A DNA stretch of 63,859 nt, counting the filler, from Bigelowiella natans CCMP2755 (taxonomy: Eukaryota > Protista > Cercozoa), in NCBI GenBank assembly GCA_000320545.1. It is 5 parts of 5 records of this genome, joined end to end, with 100 filler letters (N's around TTAATTAATTAA, not from the genome) between each part and the next. Parts side by side here need not be neighbours in the genome. Positions count along the whole stretch, not along the records: positions 19,509 to 41,104 come from ADNK01002875.1; 4 more parts are not named here. One strand, written 5' to 3'. A model generated the notes under the pieces. It was not told where the DNA came from, made no database searches, and was given only the letters and a program-made list of their open reading frames with translations. Below are positions 26,608 through 58,322 of the stretch, one piece after another. The position numbers and the translations under genes are program-made. Numbering within the stretch: the first letter of the stretch is position 1; every line of letters starts with the position of its first letter.

Positions 26608-28570
26608 ATATATAATATCAAAACCGGGTTTTGCGAACGCGAATACAACTCTGTGCGTACGTGCGCATGTGTGTGTATGTGTGTGGAGGGGGGGGGGGGG
26701 GGATGCTACTGAGACGTCTTCCAAATCATTAACAATGATGCTATGGATGATGATAACCCAGGGCGATAGCGAGCACCAATATGAACGCGCAGAGCAGCAG
26801 GAGTCACAGCGTGTTTCTAATGAAAGTGAGGCAGCTGCATAAGGACAATGCCAGCACGAAGCAATCCAAGCTCATACTCGTGGACTTAGCAGGGAGCGAG
26901 AAGGTATAATATATATATGTAAAGAAATGTGTGCTTGTGTGTGTGTGGTATGTATATGTATATGCGTGCGAAGATAAAACATTGATTTGGGTAGAGCAAA
27001 CGCATATAAGATAAAGCACAGATAAGAGATATCTCCCAACGCGTCATCTCCTTCGACTTCCTTCACGCGACCCGCCCCCGCCCCTCCCCCCCCCTTCTCA
27101 CCCTGACGTGCTCAAGGTCGAGAACACTGGCGCTAGCGGGCAAACATTGAAAGAAGCACAGCAGATCAACAAGTCCCTTTCCGCGCTCGGAAACGTGATC
27201 CACGCCCTCACATCCACGAAGACCCATCACATTCCATACCGGGACTCGAAGTTGACCAGAATTCTCTCCGATTCGTTGGGAGGCAACTCTCGAACGTGCA
27301 TCATCGTCACTGCCTCGCCAGCAGCCGGGAACATTGAGGAGACGCTGTCCACGCTGCGGTTCGCCTCGCGCGCGAAGATGGTGAAGAACAAGCCGAAGGT
27401 CAACGAGAACAAGTCGCTCGGAGAGTACAAGCGGCTGCTCAAGAAAGCGAAGGCGGAGGTTGAAGAGCTAAAGAGGCAGGTTGTGCGCGGTTCCAACACA
27501 ACAACTCGTATTTCGTCTGGGTCGAGGGAAAAGAAAGGGGAGAGCGGGGGGGGGAGGGGGGGGGGGCTCGGCGAAAAGCCCGGCCCGAGTGTATTTTGGT
27601 GACTATACTTACGATGCACTTTGTTCAGCGTGCGATAAGATATGTTGGCAAACTCACATTTGCACATTTTAAATTCACATAAATCATAATGTAAAAATAT
27701 ATATCAATAAATAACATTTTTTTTTCGCGCACGTGGGTGCGCGTGCTGCGTCTATGTAAATCATTATGCAGCAATTTGTCTTCGTAACGAGGAATGCATT
27801 TCGTCCGTTTTACAACTCAGCTTCAAGCCCATATTGACGTCGCGGCCTCCTCCGATCCTGGAGACCAGAAAACAATCAAAGACCAGCTTCTCGCCCTCAA
27901 TGAAGCTCATGCGGAGGAGATCAAAGTTCTGGTTACCAAACACAACACGGCGATCTTCGAGACACGAACCCTCGTTGAAGGAAAGGACAAGGCAATTATG
28001 GAGCTAACACAGGAGTATCAGGACAAGAAAATCGAGCTCAATCACGAGCGGTACGTGGGCGGTTTTTCGGTGGAGAAAACTGAAAATTATCAGCATATAC
28101 ACACACGTGTGTTGTAGAAATCCAGATATATGCGCGCGCAATCCGAGCGAAAGCATTGATCGATCTACCTGCTGCTCTCGGCATGTTCACCACATGTAGA
28201 GTTTTGACATGTGATCCCAGAAGTCTCTCTGGAAAAAAAGGCATTTGGTTCCTTTAGCATCACATTGCATCGGATGCGACTGAAACCGCAAACGGCGGCG
28301 CCGCGTAATCTGACCGCACTCATCGTCATGAACATTCTTTCTTCTGCAGGGAGGGATCCATTCTCAACCTGGCTAAGATCTCCATTGGCGTATCCGAAGG
28401 GATCGAGAGCTGTGGGGAAGTTCGTTCCGCGCTGCAGCAAACAGTCCAGGAGCACAGAAACTTCCAGAGTTCCCACGAGATGCATGACCTGAGCTACCTG
28501 TACAACATGAAGATCAAGGCGCTCGAGGTTTGTCACGTGTTCCCGTATGTTCTCATGTTTGCCGTACTTT

Positions 28571-28624
<54 letters not shown>

Positions 28625-30295
28625 TAAGCAATGTACACATTTACTTAGTGTTTCTTGTTCTGCGAATGGCGACTTTTGCGACCTCCTGCAAGGAGCAGAC
28701 AATGACCGCTGCTGCGAGCGCTGCATGTAGATGATCTCTCGCTCATTTTCTAAAAGTATGGTCTTTGGGGTGGGGACCAGGTTTTCGCGGAAGTGAAGAA
28801 GTCCTTAGATGCTAGCCGAGAAGAGCACGTCACCGCAAAAGAGCGTGTGAAGGGGTTGGAGGCCGAGCTTTCTAAAAAGGCTTCGGAGCTGAAGGCATCT
28901 GTCGAAAGCAAAGAGAAGGCCTTTGCGCAGGTATCCACTTTAGAAGACTCGCTTAAAGCAGCAAAAGAGGCCGCATCGAAAGCCACAGAACGAGCAGCGG
29001 ACTTAGAGAGAAAGACAACAGAGCAGCAGATGGCAGAGAGATCAGCTTTTGCGACCGCCGAGAAATCCGCGTCAGAACGAGTGACTAGCCTAGAAGCATC
29101 CCTTGCAACCTCCAAAGAGGCCGAAGCAAAGGCCACAGCGCTCGTCAAAGGCTTACGGGCTGAGCTTTCGGAGAAGGGGGCCGATATGCAAAGTTTTGTC
29201 GAAGCGAAGCAAAAGGTGGTTCTTGCATTTGCTTGCATTTGTAGAAAGCGAGCATGTGGATGGCGCTTCCCTCCTCCTCAACGTGACACGTTGTCTAATT
29301 GGCGCAAACCCGCCTCTACTTTCTGAATTTCGCAGGCAGCCGAGGAGCTGGAAAAGTCGCAGCTTCAAGTCGCAAAGCTCAGCAAGTCTCTTGCATCATC
29401 CGAGGATGAGCTCGAGCGAGGGCGGACCGAAATCGCCACGCTAAGGTCTTCTCTTCAAGAGATAGAGTCAAAGGTGTCATCTCGAGCAGCGGAGTTGGAG
29501 AAGAAGATGAAGACCGCTGAGAAGGCCTCGATTGAGGCCTTCAAAGCTGCAGATTCAAAGAGCCAAAAGCGCATTGCGGACTTAGAAGCAATGCTGGCGA
29601 GGACATCTTCGGAGCTAGAGGCAGCGAAGAGGAAGAATTCCGAGGTGGTGTGGTTGCTTTTCCGCGTTTTCATTTTGTTTTGGAGCTCGGCAAGATTCTC
29701 ATCGACGTACCAATGGGTTTTACTGTCCTTTTTTTTTGAAACATGTGACTTCCGCAGCTCAAAGAAGAGGTCAGCCTCTACAAACTCGAGGTGCGTGCGC
29801 GTTCGTTTCCGATATGTGATGCACTTCTTACACTTGGAAAAATCGTATCTGGCCGCCCCCCCCCCCCCCCTCCCCTCCTCCTCCCCGTTATCTCCAATAA
29901 AAGTTTCAGCAACAGTCAAGCGTTGCGGGTATTGGGGAACACGAGGCGGACAGACATGAAGCAGACGAAAAAGCTACTTGGGTTGGCGCTATTTCTCTTT
30001 GATACATCTAGCTAGCTAGTGCTAGTAGTAAAAATCTCTGTGAAGAGTCCGACTAGAACGCATCGTTACGACGCCATCATAAGCATCATCATTGTTTTAT
30101 AATCACTATCATCATATGCTGCAGTTGTCACTATTATTTCTGAGACAAATGGTGTTTGTACAAAGGTATGCTGCTCCTACGTCGAGCCTGTTCGCACAAG
30201 GGATTCTTCGGGGAAGCGACGGCAGAGTCCCCGGGCCAAGAAAAATAAGTATAGAAGCATGGACAAGGCGCATAAGGAAAGTCTGCTTGACATGA
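24523..30295 (+). CDS. Kinesin motor protein (kinesin-1-like head) with basic N-terminal extension and long coiled-coil tail
   Basis: [17 protein letters not shown]-loop [22 protein letters not shown], switch I NAQSSRSH, switch [45 protein letters not shown] and [16 protein letters not shown]-rich coiled-coil exons at 27.8-29.8 kb. The last exon is uncertain. Confidence 0.93.
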
Positions 30296-32912: not shown

Positions 32913-33883
32913 GAGAGTCCCAGAAGGCGCAGGGAGAGAATCTTCTTCGGATCTTCGATTCCTACGTCCAATACCAAAAATCATGGAAAATTCAATTTTT
33001 CCATTAGAAACTCGTCACCCGTCATGGTCAGTGGCAGAATGTTCTTCCATCAACAGCTTAGAACTCTGATAGCTGTAAGGGGGGGGCTCCGGCCTCGTCT
33101 TCGTGCGGCCGAATTCGAAGCGTGGAATATGAATATGGCTACTCGGACACGCAGATGAAATGGGAAATATTTTATCCCGACAATATCTGAAATTAGTCCT
33201 TGATTATTTTTTTCTGAGAAGTGAATGTCTGACCACCGCAGCCGACAAACCGCTCCAGAAAGTTTTCGATACCGAGAACATCCCATTTCGGAGGCCGCTT
33301 TCCCTTCCGAGCAAGCCGGCAGAAGGGAGGGTCGGAAACGAGACTTGGGCCTTTGTGCCTTTTCTATGTATTTTCAACATTTCCCAATGACGTTTATGCT
33401 AAACCGCATCCATTTCGGAGTGTCGGTGTTCTGAGAAAGTGCTTTCTCTCAATGGTACCGGTAGATCTACTAGTTTTGCTTGTCGTCACTCTAAATTACA
33501 GGCGAATTTCGTGCGTGTACGCCAAAAGACCCACTGCGACGTCAGGCTCGTGTCGCAAATGGGAGAATACGGTGAGAATACAGGTGAATTTATGAATACG
33601 ACGATATTTTCTCTTGTCGCAGTACGAAATTACGACTATCCTTGATTGCTTGAGCACTTCTTGAGTCGACACAGAGGCTTTGCCGCCCCGCCCCTTAGAT
33701 ACTTTTTCAAACTCGCGGATTGCCCGCACGCTACCCCTGAGCTTAAGGCTATTCGATCCTGAGCTGCGCGGAGGAGGTAAAACCACTGCACGCGCGCGCC
33801 TTTGTTTTGAAAAATGATCATCTCTTTTCCTCCCCCCCCCCCCTTTTGCCAGTCTGACCTTTATCTAACATGTCAGCACAGAA

Positions 33884-35247
33884 ATGTCCACACTCGGCGG
33901 AGAGCAGCTCCGGAACATCATAATCACCAACTATGTGGTAAGTCTCACCAGGCGCGCAGAGATGTTTAGCTGGGCTTTATTACTAACCCTATGCGCGCTG
34001 ACGAGACTCACCCCTCTCGATTCATGTATATTTGGCCTTCGGTCTTCAGGTATCGAGCTTCTCGCTCGCGGGGAGCTTGGGAATCGTGGCGTCCTACATC
34101 GCGTATGATCCCACTAGCTCTAGGCCCGGCATTCGCTGCGATCATAAAGATGCGGCCAGCGGCCACTGAATATGTGTATATATCATCGCTTTTTGCAGGT
34201 TCCCGCAGCTCCGAAACTTCAGCTATAGCCTCGTGCTGTACCTTGCTATATCAGAAGCTTTTTACAGTGTCAGGTTGGTGGAATATGTAGAGTCTTCATC
34301 CCTGCGAAGGGTGGCTGGGGTAGTTGGTTTTTTGGTGATTATTGTTTCGTGTTTTCTCTCCCAGTAACATGCTAGGAAACCCGCCCAATGCGTCGGCGAC
34401 GTGCTACGTTCAGGTCGGCGCGCTGAGATTATGACCTAGCAAATAGCGAAAGACCGATGCGCTGGGGCAATTATTTGTGTGGGGATTTTCGATGTGGTTT
34501 GCCAGAAACGACCAGCCTTAGTGCGTTTGGGTGGAATCTGATTTCTCAATATTCGCATTAGCGGATGGTGGCCTTGTTGTGGCTTTTTGTGTCGCTTAGA
34601 TATATACTATATGTGCGCTTGTGTACGCGAGCGTGAGCGCAGAAGCGGGTCTTGATTCCATCTCGGTTTGAGCTCTTCCTAATTCGTCGGTGTTGTTCGA
34701 TGTTGTGGTTGTTGTTGTTGATATGGCTCCGCGTAGTCGGTGATGCAGTCTTACTTCCTTCTATCTGCCATTCTCTGGAATGCGGCCATTGCCTACCTCC
34801 TCAAGAACGCCATTCTCTATCCTGAGAAGGTACGTTAGCCGAGCTACTTCCAAGTCTTATTTCGCACATGGCTATGTGGCCCAGACGCGGCATTTGATGT
34901 TAATTTTCTCACTCTCTCCAATATCGCTACACCGCATCATCACGTGTTTCGAGCAAGCAACACTAGCTGCTGCAATGACCTCCTCCCTCCCTCCCCGCCA
35001 TTGCCCTATTCTCCCTCCCCGTCGCTTCGGTCGTGTGTCATGCAGGTGCTGGGGATTACCAAGTCGATGCCAAGATATCACGCGTACGTCATCACTCCTC
35101 CACCGCCGCCACGACCGATAAGAAGAAGAAGAAGAAGAAGAAGAAAGAAGAATAGCAGCATCAAGAACAACAACAACAAGCATAACAAGATATAAAGATC
35201 AACAACGCAAACACTGTGTTTTTGGGAGAGAAGAGTGTATATTACCC

Positions 35248-35295
<48 letters not shown>

Positions 35296-35654
35296 CGACC
35301 CTGCCTCTTTTCTATCTTTTTCTTCCTGCCCCCCCCCCACCCCTTCTCTCCCCTGAGCAGGTATTGCTGGGGAGTGCCTTTCATACTGACGGTTCTCCCA
35401 GCGGCTACAGGAAGCTATGGCAGCTCAGGAGCTTGGTGCTGGATTAAGTCATCAACGTAATCGATGAGAGATGCCAGATGATAGTAATGTCCTTTATTAC
35501 ATGATGAGAGGTGTGAGATAATCGAGATCCGACCTATTCTCTATTTGCTGCTGCTGCCACTACTACTACTACTACTACTACTGTGTGCCAACAAAACAAG
35601 TATAGGAAGATAATTTATAATAGTTACTATATAATACACATATAATATTAAATA

Positions 35655-35728
<74 letters not shown>

Positions 35729-35981
35729 AGGGGGAGGCGTTGAATACTGCTTACTACTACACTACCGAATATTGACACATATGAGCGCTGAAAAACCTCC
35801 GAAACTGCACACCACAGAGCCGGAGAGTTCTGGAGGTTCTTTCAATTATACCTGCCTCTATGGGCAGTTATGGGTTACAACATCCAGGTATTTGGATCTA
35901 CAACTTCGTCATCATCCTCTCATCCTCGTTTTCTTTGTCTTTCACTATATTAGATATATGCATATATTTTTAAATATATTA

Positions 35982-36015
<34 letters not shown>

Positions 36016-36268
36016 ATATTATATTTATAAATTATAAACATCATATCGGATAATCGCTAACTGTTCATCATGATATTCTTCCTCCCCACCCTCCCCCCTT
36101 GCCTCTTGCCCTCCTCTTCCTCTTCCTCCTCCCCAGATGTATCTTTCTGTGCGGTCGGTGCTGAACTCAGTTGAAGGGATATGTAATGGCGGCCGTTGGC
36201 TCTCACACGCAAACCACACCTCAATCATGCTAACTGCGAAAACAGAGAATAAGAGCAGAGCATAAAGG

Positions 36269-36310
<42 letters not shown>

Positions 36311-37016
36311 CTGATCATTCTCGAAATCGCCTAATCCCCTGGTTGCTTTGCCGACGAATAATGATTTTCCGCAGCGACGTCAAGGGCGCTGGTGCTATTT
36401 CCAATGATTGTCGTGGTAGTAGCGCACACTGCTGTGTTCTTTCTTTCATCATCACCGGAGACTCCATGATATTCCCTTCAGTCGCCTAATCCTCTAACTT
36501 GGACTGACGACAACTCTTGCATGCATGTATATTGAGAGGGGGAAAAAAAAGAAAGCCGTGAAATTTATGCGCGCGCGCGCGTGCGTGTGTGCATGTTGGC
36601 GGGTTGGTGCGCGAATACAGCTACTTCGTCTTCTATCAGGTTTGTTGGATATTTGGCTCTATCAATCGTCTTCAGAACATGGCTGCACCGTCACATCCTC
36701 AGGTGGGAGGCGCCTGCACCATGCATGGACGATTGGTTGGAGAAAAAAAGGGGGTGGGGGGGGAGGGGGGGGACACAAGTGCTGAAGACAGAGCCGGTTG
36801 AGCTATATTCTTCGTCGTTATCAGGCATGGTTGTTTCTTCTTCAAGTCGCATTTGGCAATTCCATAGGTGGGAAGCAGCATGAGAGGCCGATGTATTGTA
36901 TCATTTGATCTTCTTGGAGGGATTGGGAGGGGGGGAGGGAGAGAGAGAAAGAGAGAGTTTTTTTACAAAAACAATTATATGTTTATATATGTGCATATAT
37001 TCATATATGTATGTGT

Positions 37017-37056
<40 letters not shown>

Positions 37057-37118
37057 TTGAGCAGGGTTCTTTCACTTCATCGCATTTGCAATGACACCCC
37101 CCGTCCAACAAGCCTTTG
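33884..37118 (+). CDS. GCR1/cAMP-receptor-like 7TM GPCR domain (13 exons); N-terminal half of a putative fusion gene
   Basis: In-frame spliced TMs: VSSFSLAGSLGIVASYIA|FPQLRNFSYSLVLYLAISE; CYVQ|SVMQSYFLLSAILWNAAIAY; RYHA|YCWGVPFILTVLP..SYGSSGAWCWI; FWRFFQLYLPLWAVMGYN; RALVLFPMIVV|VCWIFGSINR; WLFLLQVAFGNSIG|FFHFIAF. All intron phases are consistent. Confidence 0.9.
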
Positions 37119-37270
37119 GCACGTATCTTGGCTACTCGTATCCCTCGGAGAGGGCATCATGTATTGCCTTTCTCCACGCAAACGCACATGCACACGCACC
37201 ACACACACACACACAAGCACACACACACGCACACACACACACTGCATGATGCGAGACGATGATGGTCAAG

Positions 37271-40200
37271 AGTATTTGCGTCTCTCATTGTGGTTGCTGA
37301 AGCGAATATGCGTGAGAGCGTCGTCGTGGAATATACGTTACTAAATTAAGATTTTAAGATTTATCCCCCCGCCCCTCCCCTCCCACCCCCCTTCCGACTT
37401 TGCCAATCTTGCTGCTAATTATGGTGTGATATGAAGACGCCTCACCTTCCTCCTCCTCCTCCTTCTCCTCCTCCTCCTCCTCCCCCTCGTCGTCGTTATC
37501 ATCGTAATGGTTCTCGTGATCGTCCTTCTCATGCAGTTGCCGATGATGGCTCGGAGAAGTTTTTAGAGGGTTCTGTTGGTGACATCGGCTCAGGACGGGT
37601 ATGCGGGTGTGCTGTGTGTTGTGTGTGTGTGTGTGCTGTGTGTGTGTGTGTGTGCGTGCGTGTATATTCTCCAGCCTCTCTAACTTATCATCGCCAATAT
37701 AGCAAGTAATTGCCACTCTATCATCAGCGTATCTCCACCCACCATCAACGGTGCGCGTGCAGGCTGTGTCCGCTTGATATGCTGTTTTTGCCCGTCAATA
37801 CGAGCCATAGATCACCGTTGTTTTTTCTTCTTCTCTGTTTGCTTGGTATGTGTATTTGGCGGGGAACGAACGATGCGACAAGTCGTCTCGCTCTATCACT
37901 GCCGATGAGAAGAAGAATGCTGGCGGAGTGCATGATGGGAAGAACCTCAAGGTAAAACTTGCATTTCAAAGCGTCTGCTAGAGCGGAGGAGGAGGGGGGG
38001 GGGGGGGCTATGGAACAGCCTCATCATCACCGCTGCAGCATTATCACTTTCACATGATTCGATTGAGAATATGATATCGCTAATGGCACCTGCCTCCCCC
38101 CTCCCCCTTCTCCGCCATACGCAGGATGAAGATGACGGCAAGTTTCCAGAAGCTGTGCGGCCGAGAAGAAGATCGAGTAGCACACATACGATAGACATTG
38201 TGCAGCTTCAGTAGCTTTATGGATAAGAGGATGATGCTGTGCAGACTAACCTCGTCACACGGCTCTCTTTCCATTTATTTCTTTTTCCTTTTTCTTTCAT
38301 TTACAGTGAGTAATACTAGTAAATCTCTGTTCAAGTCGTTTGTGTGTTTGGTGCGTTAAAACCGAGTTTGTGCGTGTGCTCTCTGGGTGGGGTGATGACG
38401 TTGCTCTTTTGCTGCTTTGCCTCTGCCGCTGCCAGGCGCGCTTCAGGATGTTTCGAGGCTGGTGAGAGGTGTGAAGTCGCATCATCATCATCATCATCAT
38501 CATCATCACTATCGTCACCATCGTCACCATCGTCATCATCATCATCATCATCATCATTATCATCACCATCGCCATCATCAACAACGTGCAAAATGCGCAG
38601 GAGCTTACATTCGAGAGCTTGGCATTTACCAGCTGATAGGAATCAACTCAAACAAGAAGAATGTCGTACAGGTACTACTACTTCTACTACTTCTACTTGT
38701 AGTAGTAGTGATAATAGTAGTGATAATAGTAGTAGTAGTAGTACATTTAGCAGTAGTAGTAGCAGTAGTAGTATCAGTATTAGGAGGAGGAGGAGAAGGA
38801 GGGGAAGGAGAGGTAAAAGCGAGGAGGGATGGGAGGAGACCATTGCTCTTATGAGAGGGGAGGGTATTCTCTTAGATTCCTTCACTTAGCGTAACTCTCT
38901 AGTATGATGATATATTTCTCAAAAATTGGTATTTTGGTAGTAATAATGACAATGATCATCACCCTCCAACCCCCCCCCCCCTCCTCCTCCCCTTTTCGTC
39001 CTTCTTAAGGTGTACGACATTCTGCAAGAGCGCTACACGATTCGAGCGACCGCGCCTATAGCTGAGGTGGGATGGATGATGATGATGATGATGACGATGA
39101 TGATGGTGATGATGATGATGGTGATGATGGTAATAGTGAGGATGATGAAGGTGATAGAAATAATAATACCGCATCATTTCTTCGTCGACAAGAGAGATCC
39201 TGAGGACATTAGTGCTGGAGGCGAGCGACGGCCACTTGTTTCCCCGGAGAAGACCACAACAACAGGTGTGTGTGTGTGTGTGTGTGTTTGTGTGTGCATG
39301 TGTGCGTGTAGTTTGCAGAGGTACGTGTAAAACAAGGAGAGGTCAGTGAGAGAGCAGAGAGAGAGAGAGAGAGAGAAAGAGCGAAAAGGAGGGGGGGGAG
39401 GAGGGGGGAGGAAGTAATGATAGAGAAAGGCCTTCGAGAGAAGTGGCGGGATGAATGTTATCGTTCTATAAAGTGTTAAAGCGAAACAGCTAATCGTCGT
39501 TTGATTTGTTTATTCTTGAATTATTAATACCCTCCTCCTCAATGATCAGGAGCCTACTTAACGCTGATGAAGGCATTCGTCGGAATCGGTATCCTAGCTA
39601 TGCCCGGGGCCTACGCAGAGGTGACAGCGACAGGCCGCTCGAGGAAAATGAAAAAGGGGGGGGGGGGGGGGCGGGAGGGGGGGGGAAGGAAAAATAATAA
39701 AACAATAAAACATAAAACATAAAAACAAAAAAAGCCAAAAATCACAAAGAAAACAGCTCCTTTTTCTCACCGCGTACGTCCTCCTATCGTTGTGAAGACA
39801 AGCTTCATCATGAGAATAGTGGAGAATCGTCGTTGTGATATCCTACATAATCGCTCGTTGTTTGGTATATCAGGCTGGCTACGTCCTTGCGACAGTATTC
39901 CTCGTGATCATTGCCGTGGTGTCGTACTACTGCGCCATTCTCCTGATTAAGGCGAAGAACATAATTGTCGAGAGACACCAGGAAGAACAGGATTCTAAGA
40001 TGGTTGCTTGAATAGATCATACACGCACATACACAGCGAGGGAGGGGGAGAGAGAGGGAGGGGGGGGCGCTTGTATGGGGCCGGATTTTGGTTTTAAGAT
40101 TGTTTCAGGGGAAGAGTCGTGTGAAGATGTGCTTTACATTCGATTTTAACCATGTTTTCTTATTATTACTCAAACCGTTGCGCACACACTATATAGATGT

Positions 40201-40467
40201 ATTTATATATATATATATATATATATATGTATAATATATTGATGCGCGGAAATACAGGGGAGAGAGCGGAGTCGATGTGAGCGCGCTGATTGTTTGATGT
40301 GTCCCGGCTGATTTTGACAACAGGGGGGGGGGACGATGACCTCGGATTCTAGTCTAGCTACAAACACCCCGACCCCGGTTATCACCTTCCAAGAACTGGG
40401 CCTAAGAGTAATGACGCGAATTATAAGTATCTCTTTGAGTGTTATCATACTTATATATGAATATATA

Positions 40468-40508
<41 letters not shown>

Positions 40509-40698
40509 AAATGTACGTATATATAATGTACATATTAACTTGTGTATTTGTGGTTTTGTTGTTTATCTATTTATATTGGATGTGCCCGACGAAGGTGATG
40601 GGAGAACGAGGTAAGGCGTTGGTGGAGGGAGGAATCGTCGTATGTCAGGTATTTGCTTCATATATAAATGTGTGTATTTAACCCACACGCATAAAATA

Positions 40699-40744
<46 letters not shown>

Positions 40745-41104
40745 GCTACATATGATTTAACTTAACATCTCTACCTCCCCCCCCCCCCCCCCCCCCCCCC
40801 CCCCGTCATCTCCTCCGTTAGACGAGCTTCGTATGCGCCTACTTTCTCTTCATTGGTGATTCAGTAGAGCGTGTTATCGGCAAAGAAGGTAGTTACAACA
40901 TCCATCGGTGCAGTAAGAAGCGATAATAGAATGACGACTGATCTTTTCGTGTCCTTTTCGGTGTGGGTTCCTTTCAAATCCAATTCGTCTGTTAGCGGAC
41001 AAAATGCCGCCATAATTGCAAGCCGCCCCCCTCCCCCCCTCGATTGTAAGATTTATGCGAATACTAATATGATGACCTCCGTGCGGTAGGCTTTATATAC
41101 TCCG
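37271..41104 (+). CDS. Linker plus amino acid transporter (Aa_trans, AVT3/SLC36-like), truncated by the gap; C-terminal half of a putative fusion gene
   Basis: GAYLTLMKAFVGIGILAMPGAYAE|AGYVLATVFLVIIAVVSYYCAILLIKAK; VITFQELGLR|VMGERGKALVEGGIVVCQ|TSFVCAYFLFIGDSV. These match TM1-TM3 of the AVT/PAT family. An E..PL motif (GERRPLV) precedes them. Confidence 0.85.
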
Positions 41105-41204
41105 NNNNNNNNNNNNNNNNNNNNNNNNNNNNNNNNNNNNNNNNNNNNTTAATTAATTAANNNNNNNNNNNNNNNNNNNNNNNNNNNNNNNNNNNNNNNN
41201 NNNN
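41105..41204. other. Assembly gap with TTAATTAATTAA linker
   Basis: 100-bp N block with linker. Confidence 0.98.
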
Positions 41205-55914: not shown

Positions 55915-58322
55915 ATGATCACCCGCCGCCGGCGGCCTCATCCTCGCCACGCTGTGCTGGCTATCTTTCTCTTCCTGGCCTGGGCCCATCTCAGTTCGGA
56001 GAACCGCCCCCAGCGCAATCTTCGGGGAAGGAAGGGCTCAGGGGAGAATGACGAATCTGGCGCGATGGATGCGTCCAAAACGGCGCAGATATTGCTCGGG
56101 CGTGCTGGCGAGCATTTGAAGATGGGTATAGTAGGTCTCCCGAACGTTGGCAAGGTTGCGCATGTAGTACATGTAACAATTTAAATCTTCAACGCGAAGT
56201 GTGTCTGTTCCCGTTCTTTTTTCCCCTTTTCTCCTCCTCCTCCTCCTCCTTGTCATCGATGGTACCTCACGGAGAATCGGATACCTCCTCCACAGTCATC
56301 ACTCTTCAACCTGATGTCAAAGCTGCAAGTCCCAGCTGAGAACTACCCGTTTTGCACAATCGAGGTGTTGTCCATCAGCACTGCCGTCTACTTATTCGTC
56401 CGCATCCATTCTGAATAAATTCTAAATAGCATTCGTCGTTGTGATCAGCCCAATATCGCGAGAATGAAGGTGCCGGACCCGCGTTTCGACTGGTTATGCC
56501 AACAATTCAGCCCCAAAAGCACTGTGAGTACTACTCATTCCACAGATCAGTTCAGACTTCAGAAAATTTGAGAATAACCCACACGCGCGCGCGCGCGCCT
56601 TTACATATGTGTGTAGTGTATTAATGTTAAATTGTGTGTGTGTGTGTGTGTGTGTGTGTTATAAATTGAGATTCTTCAACTTAGATTCTGAAAGTATGCT
56701 TTAACCAAACATCTCCTGTAAAATTTTCCTATTCCCGGTCCTCCTCCTCCTCTCCGCCATGGCCAGGTTTGTGCCTACCTCGAGGTGACTGATATTGCTG
56801 GATTAGTGAGAGGGGCGGCGGACGGCCAGGTGCGTGCGAATGCGAGTGTGCCTAACACGAATGGGAGTTCACGTGATGTGCGAGAATCATTGCTGTTAGC
56901 ATGCAAAGTAGAGCTCCATTTAAGGGAAGATTACACGAACTCAGGGCCTTGGAAATAAGTTCCTGTCGCACATATACGCTGTGGATGGCATCTACCACGT
57001 CGTTCGCGCATTCAAGGCACGACGCTGATGCTGTGCTGTTGGTGTTTTCATGCTCGACAGCATTCATTCATTATGCGACAAGAAAAAGCACAGATAGACC
57101 ACCACACGCGATCCTGTATGCACGCCATGTTCCTAAGGCGTTGGTACAGCTAAAACCTTCCTTCTGTTTACTCTAACCCAACTACTCTCTTTCCCTTGTG
57201 TTAAAGGATGAAACCGTAGAGCATGTGGAGGGATCCGTCGACCCTGTGAGAGACCTGGAGATCATCACCACAGAACTCCGGTTGCTTGTAGATGATTGTG
57301 CAAAAAAGCTCTAATTCAAAACGACCGACACGCCCGCGCGCAACGATGTGAGACGTAAGCTAGCCTCCAGGAGCGACGCACCATCACTGTGAATGAATTC
57401 TCCCCGCGACGTGGTATTGAAAGAGTGGTGGTGGTGGTGGTGGTGGTGATTGACGTGAAATTGAACAGAAACAAGGATAAGGAGCTCATGGCAGCGCGCG
57501 TGTCCGACCTTGCAAGGAAGGTTGTTACGGCGGAAACTCAATGCGAGTAGAGCTCCTTTGATATGTTGTTGGATGCCGCCATTTCTGCTCACACCCCCGC
57601 CTCCCTCTCCTCATCTACTCTATCTTATATATCGTGCATCTCGTGCTCTGCCCGGCCGCTGCTTGTATTCCTCCGGGCCCCTTCTGAACCCCACTCTCCT
57701 CTGTGCAGTGTGCACGTACAAAGGACAAGGAGATCGAAACTCAGCATCAGGTACTCATCATCGTGGAGGAGGCAGGGAGACAAAGATAGAAGGGGAAAGG
57801 GGGAGATAGCGAGTGAAAGAAGTAGATTTGCATGCTGGGTTGCTGCTAAGAAGCAAACCTACCCATCTCCTTTCTCTGTATGCATTGTACTGTGCGTGAT
57901 ATCAGACGGCTGTGGAGATCCTGCGCGGCCTAGAAAATGGTACAGATGTGCGCTTCTTGGCCATGACGGCTAAGCAGGTTATCATAGCAACGGGGGGGGG
58001 GGGGGGGGGTTACCCCCCCCATTTTCTTTAAATTCAGTCGATCTAATTTAGCCGATTGGAAGTACACACACACACACACACCCCACGATTTTGAGATCTT
58101 AAGACAAGCACCTGAAAGGAAAATGACTGAGGACCTTTCCAACGAACGCATTTAGTGTATTTGTTTTTCAAAAGTGGCAATTGCGAAACGGTTGCGGGGC
58201 GGATTATCAAGCATCGGATGAACCCAAGGCTGCCATAAGAACTTTGTCCCTTCCCCCTGGTATCCAACCTAACTTGGTCGCGTCCATAGAAGAGTTGACG
58301 ACCAAGAAAAGAATCTAGGTGG
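55915..58322 (+). CDS. OLA1: Obg-like ATPase OLA1/YchF with N-terminal signal-peptide-like leader; truncated by the gap
   Basis: [18 protein letters not shown]|[15 protein letters not shown]|[21 protein letters not shown]..|[41 protein letters not shown]. Confidence 0.93.

What the first reader, a model, noticed from the sequence alone, without database searches (positions are those of the whole stretch)
33884..41104. Candidate GPCR-amino acid transporter fusion gene (possible transceptor)
Seen: a complete GCR1/cAMP-receptor-like 7TM domain (33884-37118) is followed on the same strand by an unbroken run of exons leading into an AVT/SLC36-type transporter. One stop-free splice path exists: ..PPVQQAF|EYLRLSLWLLKRICVRASSWNI|LADDGSEKFLEGSVGDIGSGR|SSRSITADEKKNAGGVHDGKNLK|DEDDGKFPEAVRPRRRS|SALQDVSRLVR|GAYIRELGIYQLIG..VVQ|VYDILQERY..AE|RDPEDISAGGERRPLVSPEKTTTT|GAYLTLMKAFVGIG. 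It needs a GC donor at 37119 (gcacgt), much like the gcacga donor that OLA1 requires at 57017. Between the halves there is no GCTAGC/TGCA 3'-flank tract and no promoter-like spacer, and two tandem + genes would break the alternating orientation seen elsewhere. Established: GPCRs fused to catalytic domains (e.g. GPCR-PIPK) occur in oomycetes and Dictyostelium; I know of no described GPCR-Aa_trans fusion. The topology fits, since the 7TM C-tail and the AVT N-terminus are both cytosolic. Inference: a nutrient-sensing receptor-transporter, perhaps vacuolar. Caveat: alternative acceptors give early stops (..GTICVSHCGC* near 37300; ..GRAVSA* near 37777).
Basis: partly seen in the sequence, partly recalled or inferred. 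Interest (0 to 1): 0.9.

Follow-up and report, generated by a model that had tools for sequence, protein, structure and literature searches.

The report
GPCR fused to amino-acid transporter
This stretch of the alga Bigelowiella natans most likely encodes one large membrane protein that joins a cAMP-receptor-type 7-helix receptor to an SLC36-type amino-acid transporter, a combination kept in related algae, apparently undescribed, and split into two broken gene models in the current annotation.

Summary
The window is Bigelowiella natans (a transporter exon is 100% identical to JGI model Bigna1/81725). From ATG 33884 to the gap at 41104 there are 26 exons on the + strand. For the first 22, a script confirmed canonical GT..AG borders and one stop-free frame. 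They encode a Dicty_CAR-type 7TM receptor, a cytosolic linker of about 130 residues, then an Aa_trans (SLC36/PAT-like) transporter.

The fusion is real in relatives:
- a complete 799-aa ORF in a Chlorarachnion reptans transcript;
- one annotated Amorphochlora gene that shares intron positions;
- one uninterrupted genomic ORF in a metagenome contig;
- a Gymnochlora transcript carrying both halves in one frame around a retained intron.

No GC donor at 37119 is needed. The exon runs on to a GT donor at 37161 and joins the acceptor ending at 37536. The "EYLRLS..." exon is spurious.

The JGI models 81724 and 81725 are broken ab initio halves. Function as a nutrient "transceptor" is inference only. 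The nearest known analogue is LYCHOS/GPR155, which has the opposite domain order and different families.

The parts
33884..41104 (+). Fused GPCR-transporter gene, 5' about two thirds. Starts at ATG 33884 and is cut by the assembly gap at 41105. About 545 of roughly 800 codons lie in the window.
   Evidence: Exon chain. Colinear tblastn with P0002 and P0005. JGI model P0001 continues beyond the gap.
33884..33937 (+). E1, start codon and receptor N-terminus (MSTLGGEQLRNIIITNYV)
   Evidence: First ATG after an in-frame stop. Aligns with residue 1 of P0002 and P0005.
34050..34102 (+). E2, TM1
34199..34273 (+). E3, TM2 (FPQLRNFSYSLVLYLAISEAFYSV)
34365..34413 (+). E4, first extracellular loop
34737..34829 (+). 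E5, TM3
   Evidence: Acceptor chosen at 34736, which keeps the same 3-residue spacing as the orthologues.
35046..35083 (+). E6
35361..35456 (+). E7, TM4 and second extracellular loop. JGI model 81724 stops here by reading into the donor.
   Evidence: Dicty_CAR 21.0 bits. P0019 ends ..WCWIKSST.
35818..35887 (+). E8, TM5 (EFWRFFQLYLPLWAVMGYNIQ)
   Evidence: 85% identical to P0002
36137..36182 (+). E9
36375..36415 (+). E10, first half of TM6
36640..36702 (+). E11, second half of TM6 (VCWIFGSINRLQN..)
   Evidence: Dicty_CAR 14.5 bits
36825..36867 (+). E12, TM7 start
37065..37160 (+). E13, TM7 end and conserved receptor tail (..TPPVQQAFGTYLGYSYPSERAS). Ends at donor GTATTG 37161, phase 1.
Evidence: Donor score 3.0, within this gene's range of -0.4 to 9.9.
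37161..37536 (+). Intron 13, the junction intron (376 nt). It has a CA microsatellite and a long pyrimidine tract before the acceptor. If it is retained, the frame stops at 37247-37249. It also holds an in-frame ATG at 37431, a possible internal start.
   Evidence: Length is within this gene's intron range of 91-376 nt, next longest 361 nt. Its acceptor is the only strong one between 37161 and 37620. ORF list.
37537..37598 (+). E14, first linker exon (F-ADDGSEKFLEGSVGDIGSGR)
   Evidence: Acceptor score 7.0, donor score 6.9-7.9. In frame with E13.
37883..37951 (+). E15, linker exon, 69 nt, phase 0 to 0. Its acceptor is weak. Skipping it would keep the frame, so it is the least certain exon.
   Evidence: Acceptor score -4.9; frame
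38125..38176 (+). E16, linker exon ending ..RPRRRS
   Evidence: Acceptor score 13.7. RRRS aligns with ..TRRRS of P0002.
38436..38468 (+). E17, start of the conserved linker motif (SALQDVSRLVR)
   Evidence: Matches STLQDVSHLVR of P0002
38601..38671 (+). E18, conserved motif GAYIRELGIYQLIG..
   Evidence: 72% identical to P0002. Among the proteins fetched here, the motif occurs only in the fused group.
39010..39066 (+). E19, VYDILQERYTIRATAPIAE
   Evidence: 75% identical to P0002
39193..39265 (+). E20, the tail just before the transporter core (..EKTTTT)
39550..39620 (+). E21, transporter TM1 (GAYLTLMKAFVGIGILAMPGAYAE)
   Evidence: Aa_trans profile positions 8-29. 88% identical to P0002.
39874..40002 (+). 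E22, transporter TM2
   Evidence: Aa_trans profile positions 31-65. 100% identical to residues 124-166 of P0001.
40324..40407 (+). E23, loop and ..VITFQELGLR
   Evidence: Read from the sequence. Matches P0001 and P0002.
40595..40648 (+). E24, VMGERGKALVEGGIVVCQ
40822..40888 (+). E25, TM3 (TSFVCAYFLFIGDSVERVIGKE)
   Evidence: 82% identical to P0002
41090..41104 (+). E26, first codons only (G-FIYS..), cut by the gap
   Evidence: Acceptor at 41088-41089. Fits the orthologues' ..K(D/Q)GF(L/F)...
37271..37336 (+). It is not an exon.
   Evidence: Acceptor score -9.9, donor score 0.2. No counterpart in any orthologue.

Best explanation
The locus is one gene of Bigelowiella natans. It has at least 26 short exons and continues beyond the gap at 41105. 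It encodes a hybrid membrane protein of about 800 residues and 18 transmembrane helices, in three parts:
- an N-terminal 7TM receptor of the cAMP-receptor/GCR1 (Dicty_CAR) family, exons E1-E13;
- a cytosolic linker of about 130 residues, E13 tail to E20. The first half is variable and rich in acidic and serine residues. The second half is conserved (RRRS..LQDVSxLVRGAYLxELGIYQLIG..VYDILQE);
- an 11-TM amino-acid transporter of the Aa_trans family, closest to proton-coupled PAT1/SLC36A1, from E21 onward.

The two halves are joined by ordinary GT-AG splicing of intron 13, from donor 37161 to the acceptor ending at 37536.

Shown:
- the exon chain and its single open frame in B. natans;
- the same architecture as one ORF or one transcript in four relatives;
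- both folds in a structure predicted for the C. reptans orthologue.

Inferred:
- that B. natans really splices E13 to E14;
- a topology with the receptor C-tail and the transporter N-tail both cytosolic;
- the function. I propose a 'transceptor', about 35% likely. Amino-acid binding or transport by the SLC36-like half and the conformational state of the 7TM half would influence each other through the conserved cytosolic linker, so that nutrient availability is read out by G-protein or other 7TM signalling, or transport is gated by a ligand of the receptor. The membrane, plasma membrane or vacuole/lysosome, is unknown.

Alternative use of the junction intron may also produce a receptor-only product, either by retention of the intron or through the out-of-frame donor at 37123.
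For: Identity of the organism and the existing models:
- Exon 39874-40002 is 100% identical to JGI Bigna1/81725.
- The neighbouring model 81724 is the receptor.
- Both are ab initio fgenesh models and visibly broken. 81724 ends at E7 and carries extra 5' exons with no counterpart in the orthologues. 81725 has an odd start and an extra exon.

Exon chain:
- 22 exons, all GT..AG, 478 codons, no stop.
- Colinear with fused orthologues over the receptor, linker and transporter.
- Intron 13 is 376 nt, like the other introns of this gene (91-361 nt).
- Its acceptor is the only strong one between 37161 and 37620.

Fusion in relatives:
- C. reptans transcript L001 has a complete 799-aa CDS with an in-frame stop in the 5' UTR, Dicty_CAR 5.3e-14 and Aa_trans 2.9e-56.
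- Amorphochlora gene AAMO2058_000710900 is a single gene with two isoforms and shares intron positions with B. natans.
- P0007 is one uninterrupted ORF in genomic metagenome contigs.
- Gymnochlora transcript L004 carries both ORFs in the same frame. They are separated only by two stops inside a 174-nt segment with GC 0.32, against about 0.41-0.42 on either side, bounded by GT..AG.

Folds:
- AlphaFold2 model of P0002: pLDDT 77, 7 plus 11 TM helices.
- Foldseek matches the C-terminal half to SLC38A9, AUX1 and LAX3 and the N-terminal half to GPCRs. TM-score normalised to the target is about 0.7-0.79 for the best matches.
- By sequence the closest solved structure is PAT1/SLC36A1, 1.1e-34.
Against: - There is no RNA evidence for B. 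natans itself.
- No B. natans transcript-derived protein turned up in the length ranges searched.
- No contig turned up in two DNA scans of the metagenome collection.
- The donor at 37161 is only moderate (score 3.0). A stronger GT at 37123 (score 5.8) is out of frame with E14 and would end the protein at ..QQAFGTCR*.
- An in-frame ATG at 37431 could start a transporter-only protein.
- Retention of intron 13 gives a receptor-only ORF that stops at 37249.
- The JGI annotation has two models.
- The proposed function has no direct support. The model's pTM of 0.53 says nothing reliable about contact between the two halves.
Confidence: 0.82

Rival explanations
1. In B. natans the two halves are separate tandem genes, either never fused or split secondarily. 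The receptor would end at the stop 37247-37249 in the unspliced continuation of E13. The transporter would start at ATG 37431 (MKTPHLPPPPPS..ADDGSEK..).
For: - JGI annotates two models, 81724 and 81725.
- The ATG at 37431 is in frame with E14 with no stop between them.
- No B. natans fused transcript was recovered.
Against: - Both JGI models are ab initio and demonstrably wrong elsewhere.
- The supposed intergenic space would be only about 180 nt, in a locus whose introns are 91-376 nt.
- The 'MKTPHLPPPPPS' stretch is a pyrimidine tract of the kind that precedes several other acceptors of this gene (for example introns 5, 6, 8 and 18). Such a tract is stop-poor by composition.
- E13 and E14 are in frame.
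- All four relatives keep both halves in one frame or one transcript.
Confidence: 0.1
2. The locus makes several products. Besides the fused protein it would make a receptor-only form, by intron-13 retention or the out-of-frame donor at 37123, and perhaps a transporter-only form from an internal start. The junction intron would then act as a regulated switch. This adds to the main explanation and does not exclude it.
For: - The Gymnochlora transcript retains an intron just downstream of the conserved TPPV motif of TM7, close to but not at the position of B. natans intron 13. This splits the ORF into receptor and transporter parts.
- In B. natans the GT at 37123 outscores the in-frame donor, 5.8 against 3.0, and gives ..GTCR*.
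- Amorphochlora is annotated with two isoforms.
Against: - One retained intron in one assembled transcript may be unprocessed RNA.
- The out-of-frame product would carry a premature stop far upstream of many exon junctions, so it may simply be degraded.
- There are no quantitative data.
Confidence: 0.3
3. The fusion seen in relatives is an artefact, from chimeric transcript assembly or read-through of neighbouring genes, and no fused protein exists.
For: Transcriptome assemblers can join neighbouring genes. The Gymnochlora contig contains stops between the two halves.
Against: - P0007 is a single uninterrupted ORF in genomic DNA, on contigs from two assemblies (ENA ERZ23491473 and Logan ERR4674720).
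- The C. reptans CDS is open through 799 codons.
- Frame, linker motif and intron positions are conserved across genera.
- In B. natans the frame is kept across 21 introns.
Confidence: 0.02

Closest known systems
LYCHOS / GPR155 (human lysosomal cholesterol sensor; PMC11525196)
   Same: One polypeptide combines a polytopic transporter domain with a 7TM GPCR-like domain. It is regarded as a nutrient 'transceptor'.
   Different: - The domain order is reversed: in LYCHOS the transporter is N-terminal and the GPCR C-terminal.
- Its transporter is PIN/auxin-carrier-like, not Aa_trans/LeuT-fold.
- LYCHOS has a C-terminal DEP domain. No DEP or other soluble domain was found here.
- The two are not homologous fusions and would be convergent.
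GPCR-bigrams such as GPCR-PIPK/RpkA of oomycetes, Dictyostelium and B. natans (PMC6033456, PMC5784254)
   Same: An N-terminal 7TM receptor is joined through its cytosolic tail to a C-terminal effector domain. In RpkA the receptor is also of the cAMP-receptor type (PMC3971589). GPCR-PIPKs were reported from B. natans itself.
   Different: The described accessory domains are soluble catalytic domains: PIPK, INPP, adenylyl cyclase, PDE and TKL. Here the accessory part is an 11-TM transporter. The survey in PMC5784254 deliberately discarded gene models resembling transporters.
PAT1/SLC36A1 and yeast AVT3/4-type vacuolar amino-acid transporters; SLC38A9
   Same: The C-terminal half is an Aa_trans protein. 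PAT1 is the best solved relative (1.1e-34). The fold matches SLC38A9, AUX1 and LAX3. From my own knowledge, PATs and SLC38A9 have been proposed as amino-acid transceptors for TORC1.
   Different: None of them carries a 7TM receptor. The conserved GAYLxELGIYQ linker motif is absent from the transporter-only homologues fetched here.
Dictyostelium cAR1-4 / plant GCR1 (Pfam Dicty_CAR)
   Same: The N-terminal half matches Dicty_CAR and, more weakly, the Frizzled/Smoothened membrane region.
   Different: Those receptors end in a free cytosolic tail. The ligand here is unknown, and nothing indicates cAMP.

Membership tests
Dicty_CAR (PF05462) cAMP-receptor/GCR1-like GPCRs | Profile match at or above Pfam's gathering score | tested here: met
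   B. natans was tested exon by exon only. E7 scores 21.0 bits against a cut-off of 21, and E11 scores 14.5 bits. Orthologues P0002 and P0003 score 52.5 and 49.1 bits. The joined B. natans protein was not scanned, by rule.
Dicty_CAR (PF05462) cAMP-receptor/GCR1-like GPCRs | Seven transmembrane helices with a GPCR fold | tested here: met
   The AlphaFold2 model of orthologue P0002 has seven helices plus helix 8 within residues 6-261. Foldseek matches adhesion, Frizzled and class A GPCRs at a target-normalised TM-score of about 0.6-0.78. The B. natans exons align along the whole domain.
Dicty_CAR (PF05462) cAMP-receptor/GCR1-like GPCRs | Ligand binding and G-protein coupling | not testable with these tools
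   Needs experiments.
Aa_trans (PF01490), SLC36/PAT/AVT3-4 branch | Profile match above the gathering score | tested here: met
   P0001, the JGI model of this locus, scores 115 bits. P0002 scores 191 bits. Exons E21 and E22 cover profile positions 8-65.
Aa_trans (PF01490), SLC36/PAT/AVT3-4 branch | Closer to SLC36 than to SLC38 or SLC32 | tested here: met
   PAT1/SLC36A1 (9v3t) scores 1.1e-34 against 2.9e-06 for SLC38A9. This was tested on orthologue P0002. No tree was built.
Aa_trans (PF01490), SLC36/PAT/AVT3-4 branch | 11-TM LeuT-type fold | tested here: met
   The model has 11 helices in residues 393-796. SLC38A9, AUX1 and LAX3 match at a target-normalised TM-score of about 0.7-0.79.
Aa_trans (PF01490), SLC36/PAT/AVT3-4 branch | Proton-coupled amino-acid transport | not testable with these tools
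   Needs a transport assay.
GPCR-bigram (van den Hoogen and Govers) | N-terminal 7TM receptor with a C-terminal accessory domain in one protein | tested here: met
GPCR-bigram (van den Hoogen and Govers) | The accessory domain is a soluble catalytic domain | tested here: not met
   The only C-terminal domain found is the Aa_trans membrane transporter.
LYCHOS/GPR155-type hybrid | PIN-like (Mem_trans) transporter N-terminal to the GPCR, plus a DEP domain | tested here: not met
   Pfam finds Dicty_CAR and then Aa_trans, with no Mem_trans and no DEP.
Single fused transcription unit in B. natans | Spliced RNA that joins 37160 to 37537 | not testable with these tools
No B. natans transcript contig was found.

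The most novel reading that the evidence does not exclude
Chlorarachniophytes and an unidentified environmental relative carry a conserved 18-TM 'transceptor'. In it an SLC36-like amino-acid transporter would be mechanically coupled, through a conserved cytosolic linker (GAYLxELGIYQ motif), to a cAMP-receptor-type GPCR. Amino-acid transport or occupancy would then directly drive 7TM signalling, or a receptor ligand would gate transport. This would be an independent, convergent counterpart of LYCHOS/GPR155, built from different families in the opposite order. The junction intron would serve as a switch between fused and receptor-only products.
Probability: 0.3. Interest if true: 0.85.

Novelty: new variant of a known kind. 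Interest (0 to 1): 0.68.

Why it matters
- **A second kind of GPCR-transporter hybrid.** Hybrids of a GPCR and a transporter were thought exceptional, and LYCHOS/GPR155 is the one studied case. A second type was invented independently. It joins a Dicty_CAR receptor to an SLC36-like carrier and is conserved across at least four chlorarachniophyte genera. That would show that wiring a nutrient carrier directly to a 7TM receptor is a recurrent solution.
- **A tractable system.** From my own knowledge, Amorphochlora is transformable. That would allow a direct test of how a transporter and a receptor talk to each other within one chain.
- **A wider 'GPCR-bigram' concept.** It would extend from soluble catalytic partners to membrane transporters, which earlier surveys filtered out.
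- **Annotation.** JGI models Bigna1/81724 and 81725 should be merged and corrected. Domain-architecture surveys based on them will have missed the fusion.

Tried and rejected
So there is no read evidence. Local BLAST databases left them out. Local composition and splice-site statistics for intron 12 did read them.
3. I found no B. natans transcript-derived protein with queries P0002 (candidates of 440-1398 aa), P0001 (186-593 aa) or the C. reptans receptor part (165-525 aa). These found only the two JGI models.
4. Exact-match scans of metagenome contigs with 40 nt of E14 and with the last 31 nt of E13 found nothing.
5. The ESM Atlas search gave no usable hit.
7. The GCTAGC '3'-flank tract' is not enriched: 8 occurrences against 5.5 expected. 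It was not used as evidence.
8. Gymnochlora proteins P0004 and P0006 first looked like a transporter-only orthologue. The transcript L004 shows the receptor ORF upstream in the same frame, so that reading is rejected.
9. The joined spliced B. natans protein was never assembled for a search or a fold. Exons were searched one by one by reference, and a natural orthologue (P0002) was folded instead.
10. Literature searches for Dicty_CAR + Aa_trans, Bigelowiella + GPCR + amino acid transporter, and chlorarachniophyte + GPCR + transporter + fusion found no description of this architecture.
11. The run list shows 18 runs that hold 0.06-0.17 of the sampled words. My own count of 31-mers lying wholly inside exons predicts about 0.12 if all exons of both halves are expressed. 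This is compatible with expression of the whole locus. The runs' nature, RNA or DNA, is only guessed, so I give it no weight.

Full report
**What the window is.** The sequence is an intron-rich eukaryote. Exons are 33-129 nt. Introns are full of TA and CA microsatellites and C/T tracts. I searched the 43-residue transporter exon 39874-40002 against 1.8 billion cluster representatives. It hit a 339-aa protein at 100% identity, which is JGI model Bigna1/81725 of Bigelowiella natans. B. natans is a chlorarachniophyte alga in Cercozoa, Rhizaria. The neighbouring model Bigna1/81724 is the receptor half.

**The observation.** Exon-level Pfam scans gave Dicty_CAR for 35362-35457 (21.0 bits, cut-off 21) and 36610-36702. 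They gave Aa_trans for 39549-39620 and 39874-40002, covering profile positions 8-65. I mapped exon borders from the sequence, guided by tblastn of the orthologues. A script then checked them:
- 22 exons from ATG 33884 to 40002;
- every intron GT..AG;
- one frame, 478 codons, no stop.

Four further exons follow: 40324-40407, 40595-40648, 40822-40888 and 41090 onward. The piece then ends in a gap. The gene goes on beyond it, because P0001 contains later transporter segments.

**The junction.** Both fail.
- On a leave-one-out matrix built from this gene's other introns, the GC site scores -0.4.
- The extra exon's acceptor scores -9.9 and its donor 0.2.
- The receptor tail is conserved beyond 37119. 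B. natans reads ..TPPVQQAFGTYLGYSYPSE and C. reptans reads ..TPPVRQALGNFFGYDVSDSE.

So exon 13 runs to 37160 and uses GTATTG at 37161 (score 3.0; this gene's donors range from -0.4 to 9.9). That donor leaves one base. The base completes a codon with the first two bases after the acceptor ending at 37536. This acceptor scores 7.0 and is the only strong one between 37161 and 37620. It is preceded by a long pyrimidine tract of the kind seen before several other acceptors of this gene (for example introns 5, 6, 8 and 18). Intron 13 is 376 nt. The other introns are 91-361 nt, so nothing marks it as an intergenic spacer.

**Relatives.** The same representative search returned fused proteins.
- P0002 is a 799-aa protein from a Chlorarachnion reptans MMETSP transcript. 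It has Dicty_CAR at residues 23-249 (5.3e-14) and Aa_trans (2.9e-56). Its contig L001 holds a complete CDS at 169-2568, with an in-frame stop in the 5' UTR.
- P0005 and P0003 are two isoforms of one annotated Amorphochlora amoebiformis gene, AAMO2058_000710900, which spans 19.5 kb. The exons mapped by tblastn begin or end at the same protein positions as B. natans exon borders: H(G/A)|YCWG, SS|AG, R|GAYL, T|GAYLT and YAQ|AGY.
- P0007 (827 aa, 50% identical to P0002, both Pfam families) is one uninterrupted ORF, L002/L003 6001-8484. It lies in genomic metagenome contigs of an unidentified organism with closely spaced, intron-poor genes.
- The Gymnochlora proteins P0004 and P0006 looked transporter-only. 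Their transcript L004, however, carries a 306-codon receptor ORF upstream in the same frame. Only two stops separate the two ORFs. Both stops lie in a 174-nt segment with GC 0.32, against about 0.41-0.42 on either side, bounded by GAG|GTAAAT and AAAAG|. This is a retained intron whose removal restores one frame.

The architecture is therefore present in four chlorarachniophyte genera and one environmental relative. It cannot be an assembly chimera.

**The JGI models.** Both are fgenesh ab initio models. Model 81724 (P0019) starts with exons that have no counterpart in any orthologue and contains an intronic insert. It stops at ..WCWIKSST because it reads into the donor of exon 7, so it lacks TM5-7. 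Model 81725 (P0001) begins in a wrong frame upstream of exon 18 and includes an extra 'VCRGTCKTRR' segment. They are no evidence for two genes.

**What the protein looks like.** I folded the natural orthologue P0002 with a 17-row alignment instead.
- Mean pLDDT is 77.
- There are seven helices plus helix 8 in residues 6-261.
- Residues 267-325 form a disordered linker.
- Short helices cover the conserved motif at 321-368.
- Eleven helices span residues 393-796.

Foldseek matches the C-terminal half to SLC38A9, AUX1 and LAX3. It matches the N-terminal half to adhesion, Frizzled and class A GPCRs. By sequence the transporter half is closest to PAT1/SLC36A1 (1.1e-34) and far from SLC38A9 (2.9e-06). 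The receptor half matches Smoothened weakly. The pTM of 0.53 does not allow any statement on how the halves pack.

From established knowledge of both families, a 7TM receptor ends in the cytosol and Aa_trans carriers start there. The fusion is therefore topologically consistent. Among the proteins fetched, the linker motif RRRS..LQDVSxLVRGAYLxELGIYQLIG occurs only in the fused group.

**How it probably works.** The single 18-TM chain is well supported. Function is inference. My preferred reading, about one in three, is a transceptor. In it the state of an SLC36-like amino-acid carrier and that of a cAMP-receptor-type 7TM domain are coupled through the conserved cytosolic linker. De Mendoza et al. 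report lineage-specific diversification of G-alpha subunits in B. natans and suggest that it has canonical GPCR signalling (PMC3971589). A canonical output is therefore conceivable.

The junction intron may also act as a switch.
- Its retention stops the frame at 37247-37249.
- The stronger but out-of-frame GT at 37123 gives ..QQAFGTCR*.
- An in-frame ATG at 37431 could start a transporter-only form.
- Gymnochlora's retained intron lies close to the same junction.

**What is missing.** There is no RNA evidence from B. natans. I worked beside those places and sent none of their letters to any search tool. Protein searches in three length ranges found no B. natans transcript. Two exact DNA scans also found none.

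**Known or new.** Full-text searches found no description of a Dicty_CAR plus Aa_trans protein. The closest known systems are:
- LYCHOS/GPR155, a PIN-like transporter followed by a GPCR and a DEP domain (PMC11525196). It has the opposite order and unrelated families.
- The GPCR-bigrams, 7TM receptors with soluble catalytic C-terminal domains (PMC6033456, PMC5784254). That survey discarded transporter-like gene models.

I therefore rate this a new variant of a known kind. I put 0.82 on the locus being one fused gene, with function open.

Noticed in passing
window 19538-20155: A 309-nt arm repeated as a perfect (99%) zero-spacer palindrome, centred on a (CA)n(TA)n tract, right at the start of the piece. 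It may be a fold-back assembly artefact at a contig end or a real hairpin-forming repeat.
   Followed up: partly
window 21695-22921 (- strand): An intron-free 408-aa ORF in a GC-rich island (GC 0.57-0.62, against 0.44-0.51 nearby). It has repeated 'LY.LD..G.L' units and only faint Kelch or beta-propeller hits. This is unusual in a genome where the neighbouring genes have exons of 33-129 nt. It could be a retrogene or an acquired gene.
   Followed up: partly
window about 25300-30000 (+ strand): A kinesin heavy-chain-like gene. Motor-domain exons score Kinesin 4.6e-37 and 9.1e-20, and coiled-coil exons follow.
   Followed up: partly
window 33160-33880 and P0019: JGI model Bigna1/81724 has about 118 residues of 5' exons upstream of the orthologous start codon at 33884. 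None of the orthologues has them. They are probably spurious or 5' UTR exons.
   Followed up: partly
window 38601-38671 and 39550-39620: Exons E18 and E21 are both 71 nt, in the same phase, and both start with G-A-Y-(I/L) and carry I-G 12 residues later (GAYIRELGIYQLIG against GAYLTLMKAFVGIG). The conserved linker motif might be an old duplicate of the exon encoding transporter TM1. The similarity is weak and was not tested.
   Followed up: no
L002 6001-8484: The metagenomic fused ORF has no ATG before the middle of TM1. It was called from GTG, and there is an in-frame stop 31 codons upstream. The true start probably lies in a small upstream exon. The organism has closely spaced, mostly intron-free genes with GC 0.54 and is unidentified.
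   Followed up: partly
window 21141-21248 and 30011: Three GCTAGC copies lie within about 110 nt downstream of the minus-strand ORF, and one lies near the end of the kinesin gene. Within this window the motif is not enriched.
   Followed up: partly
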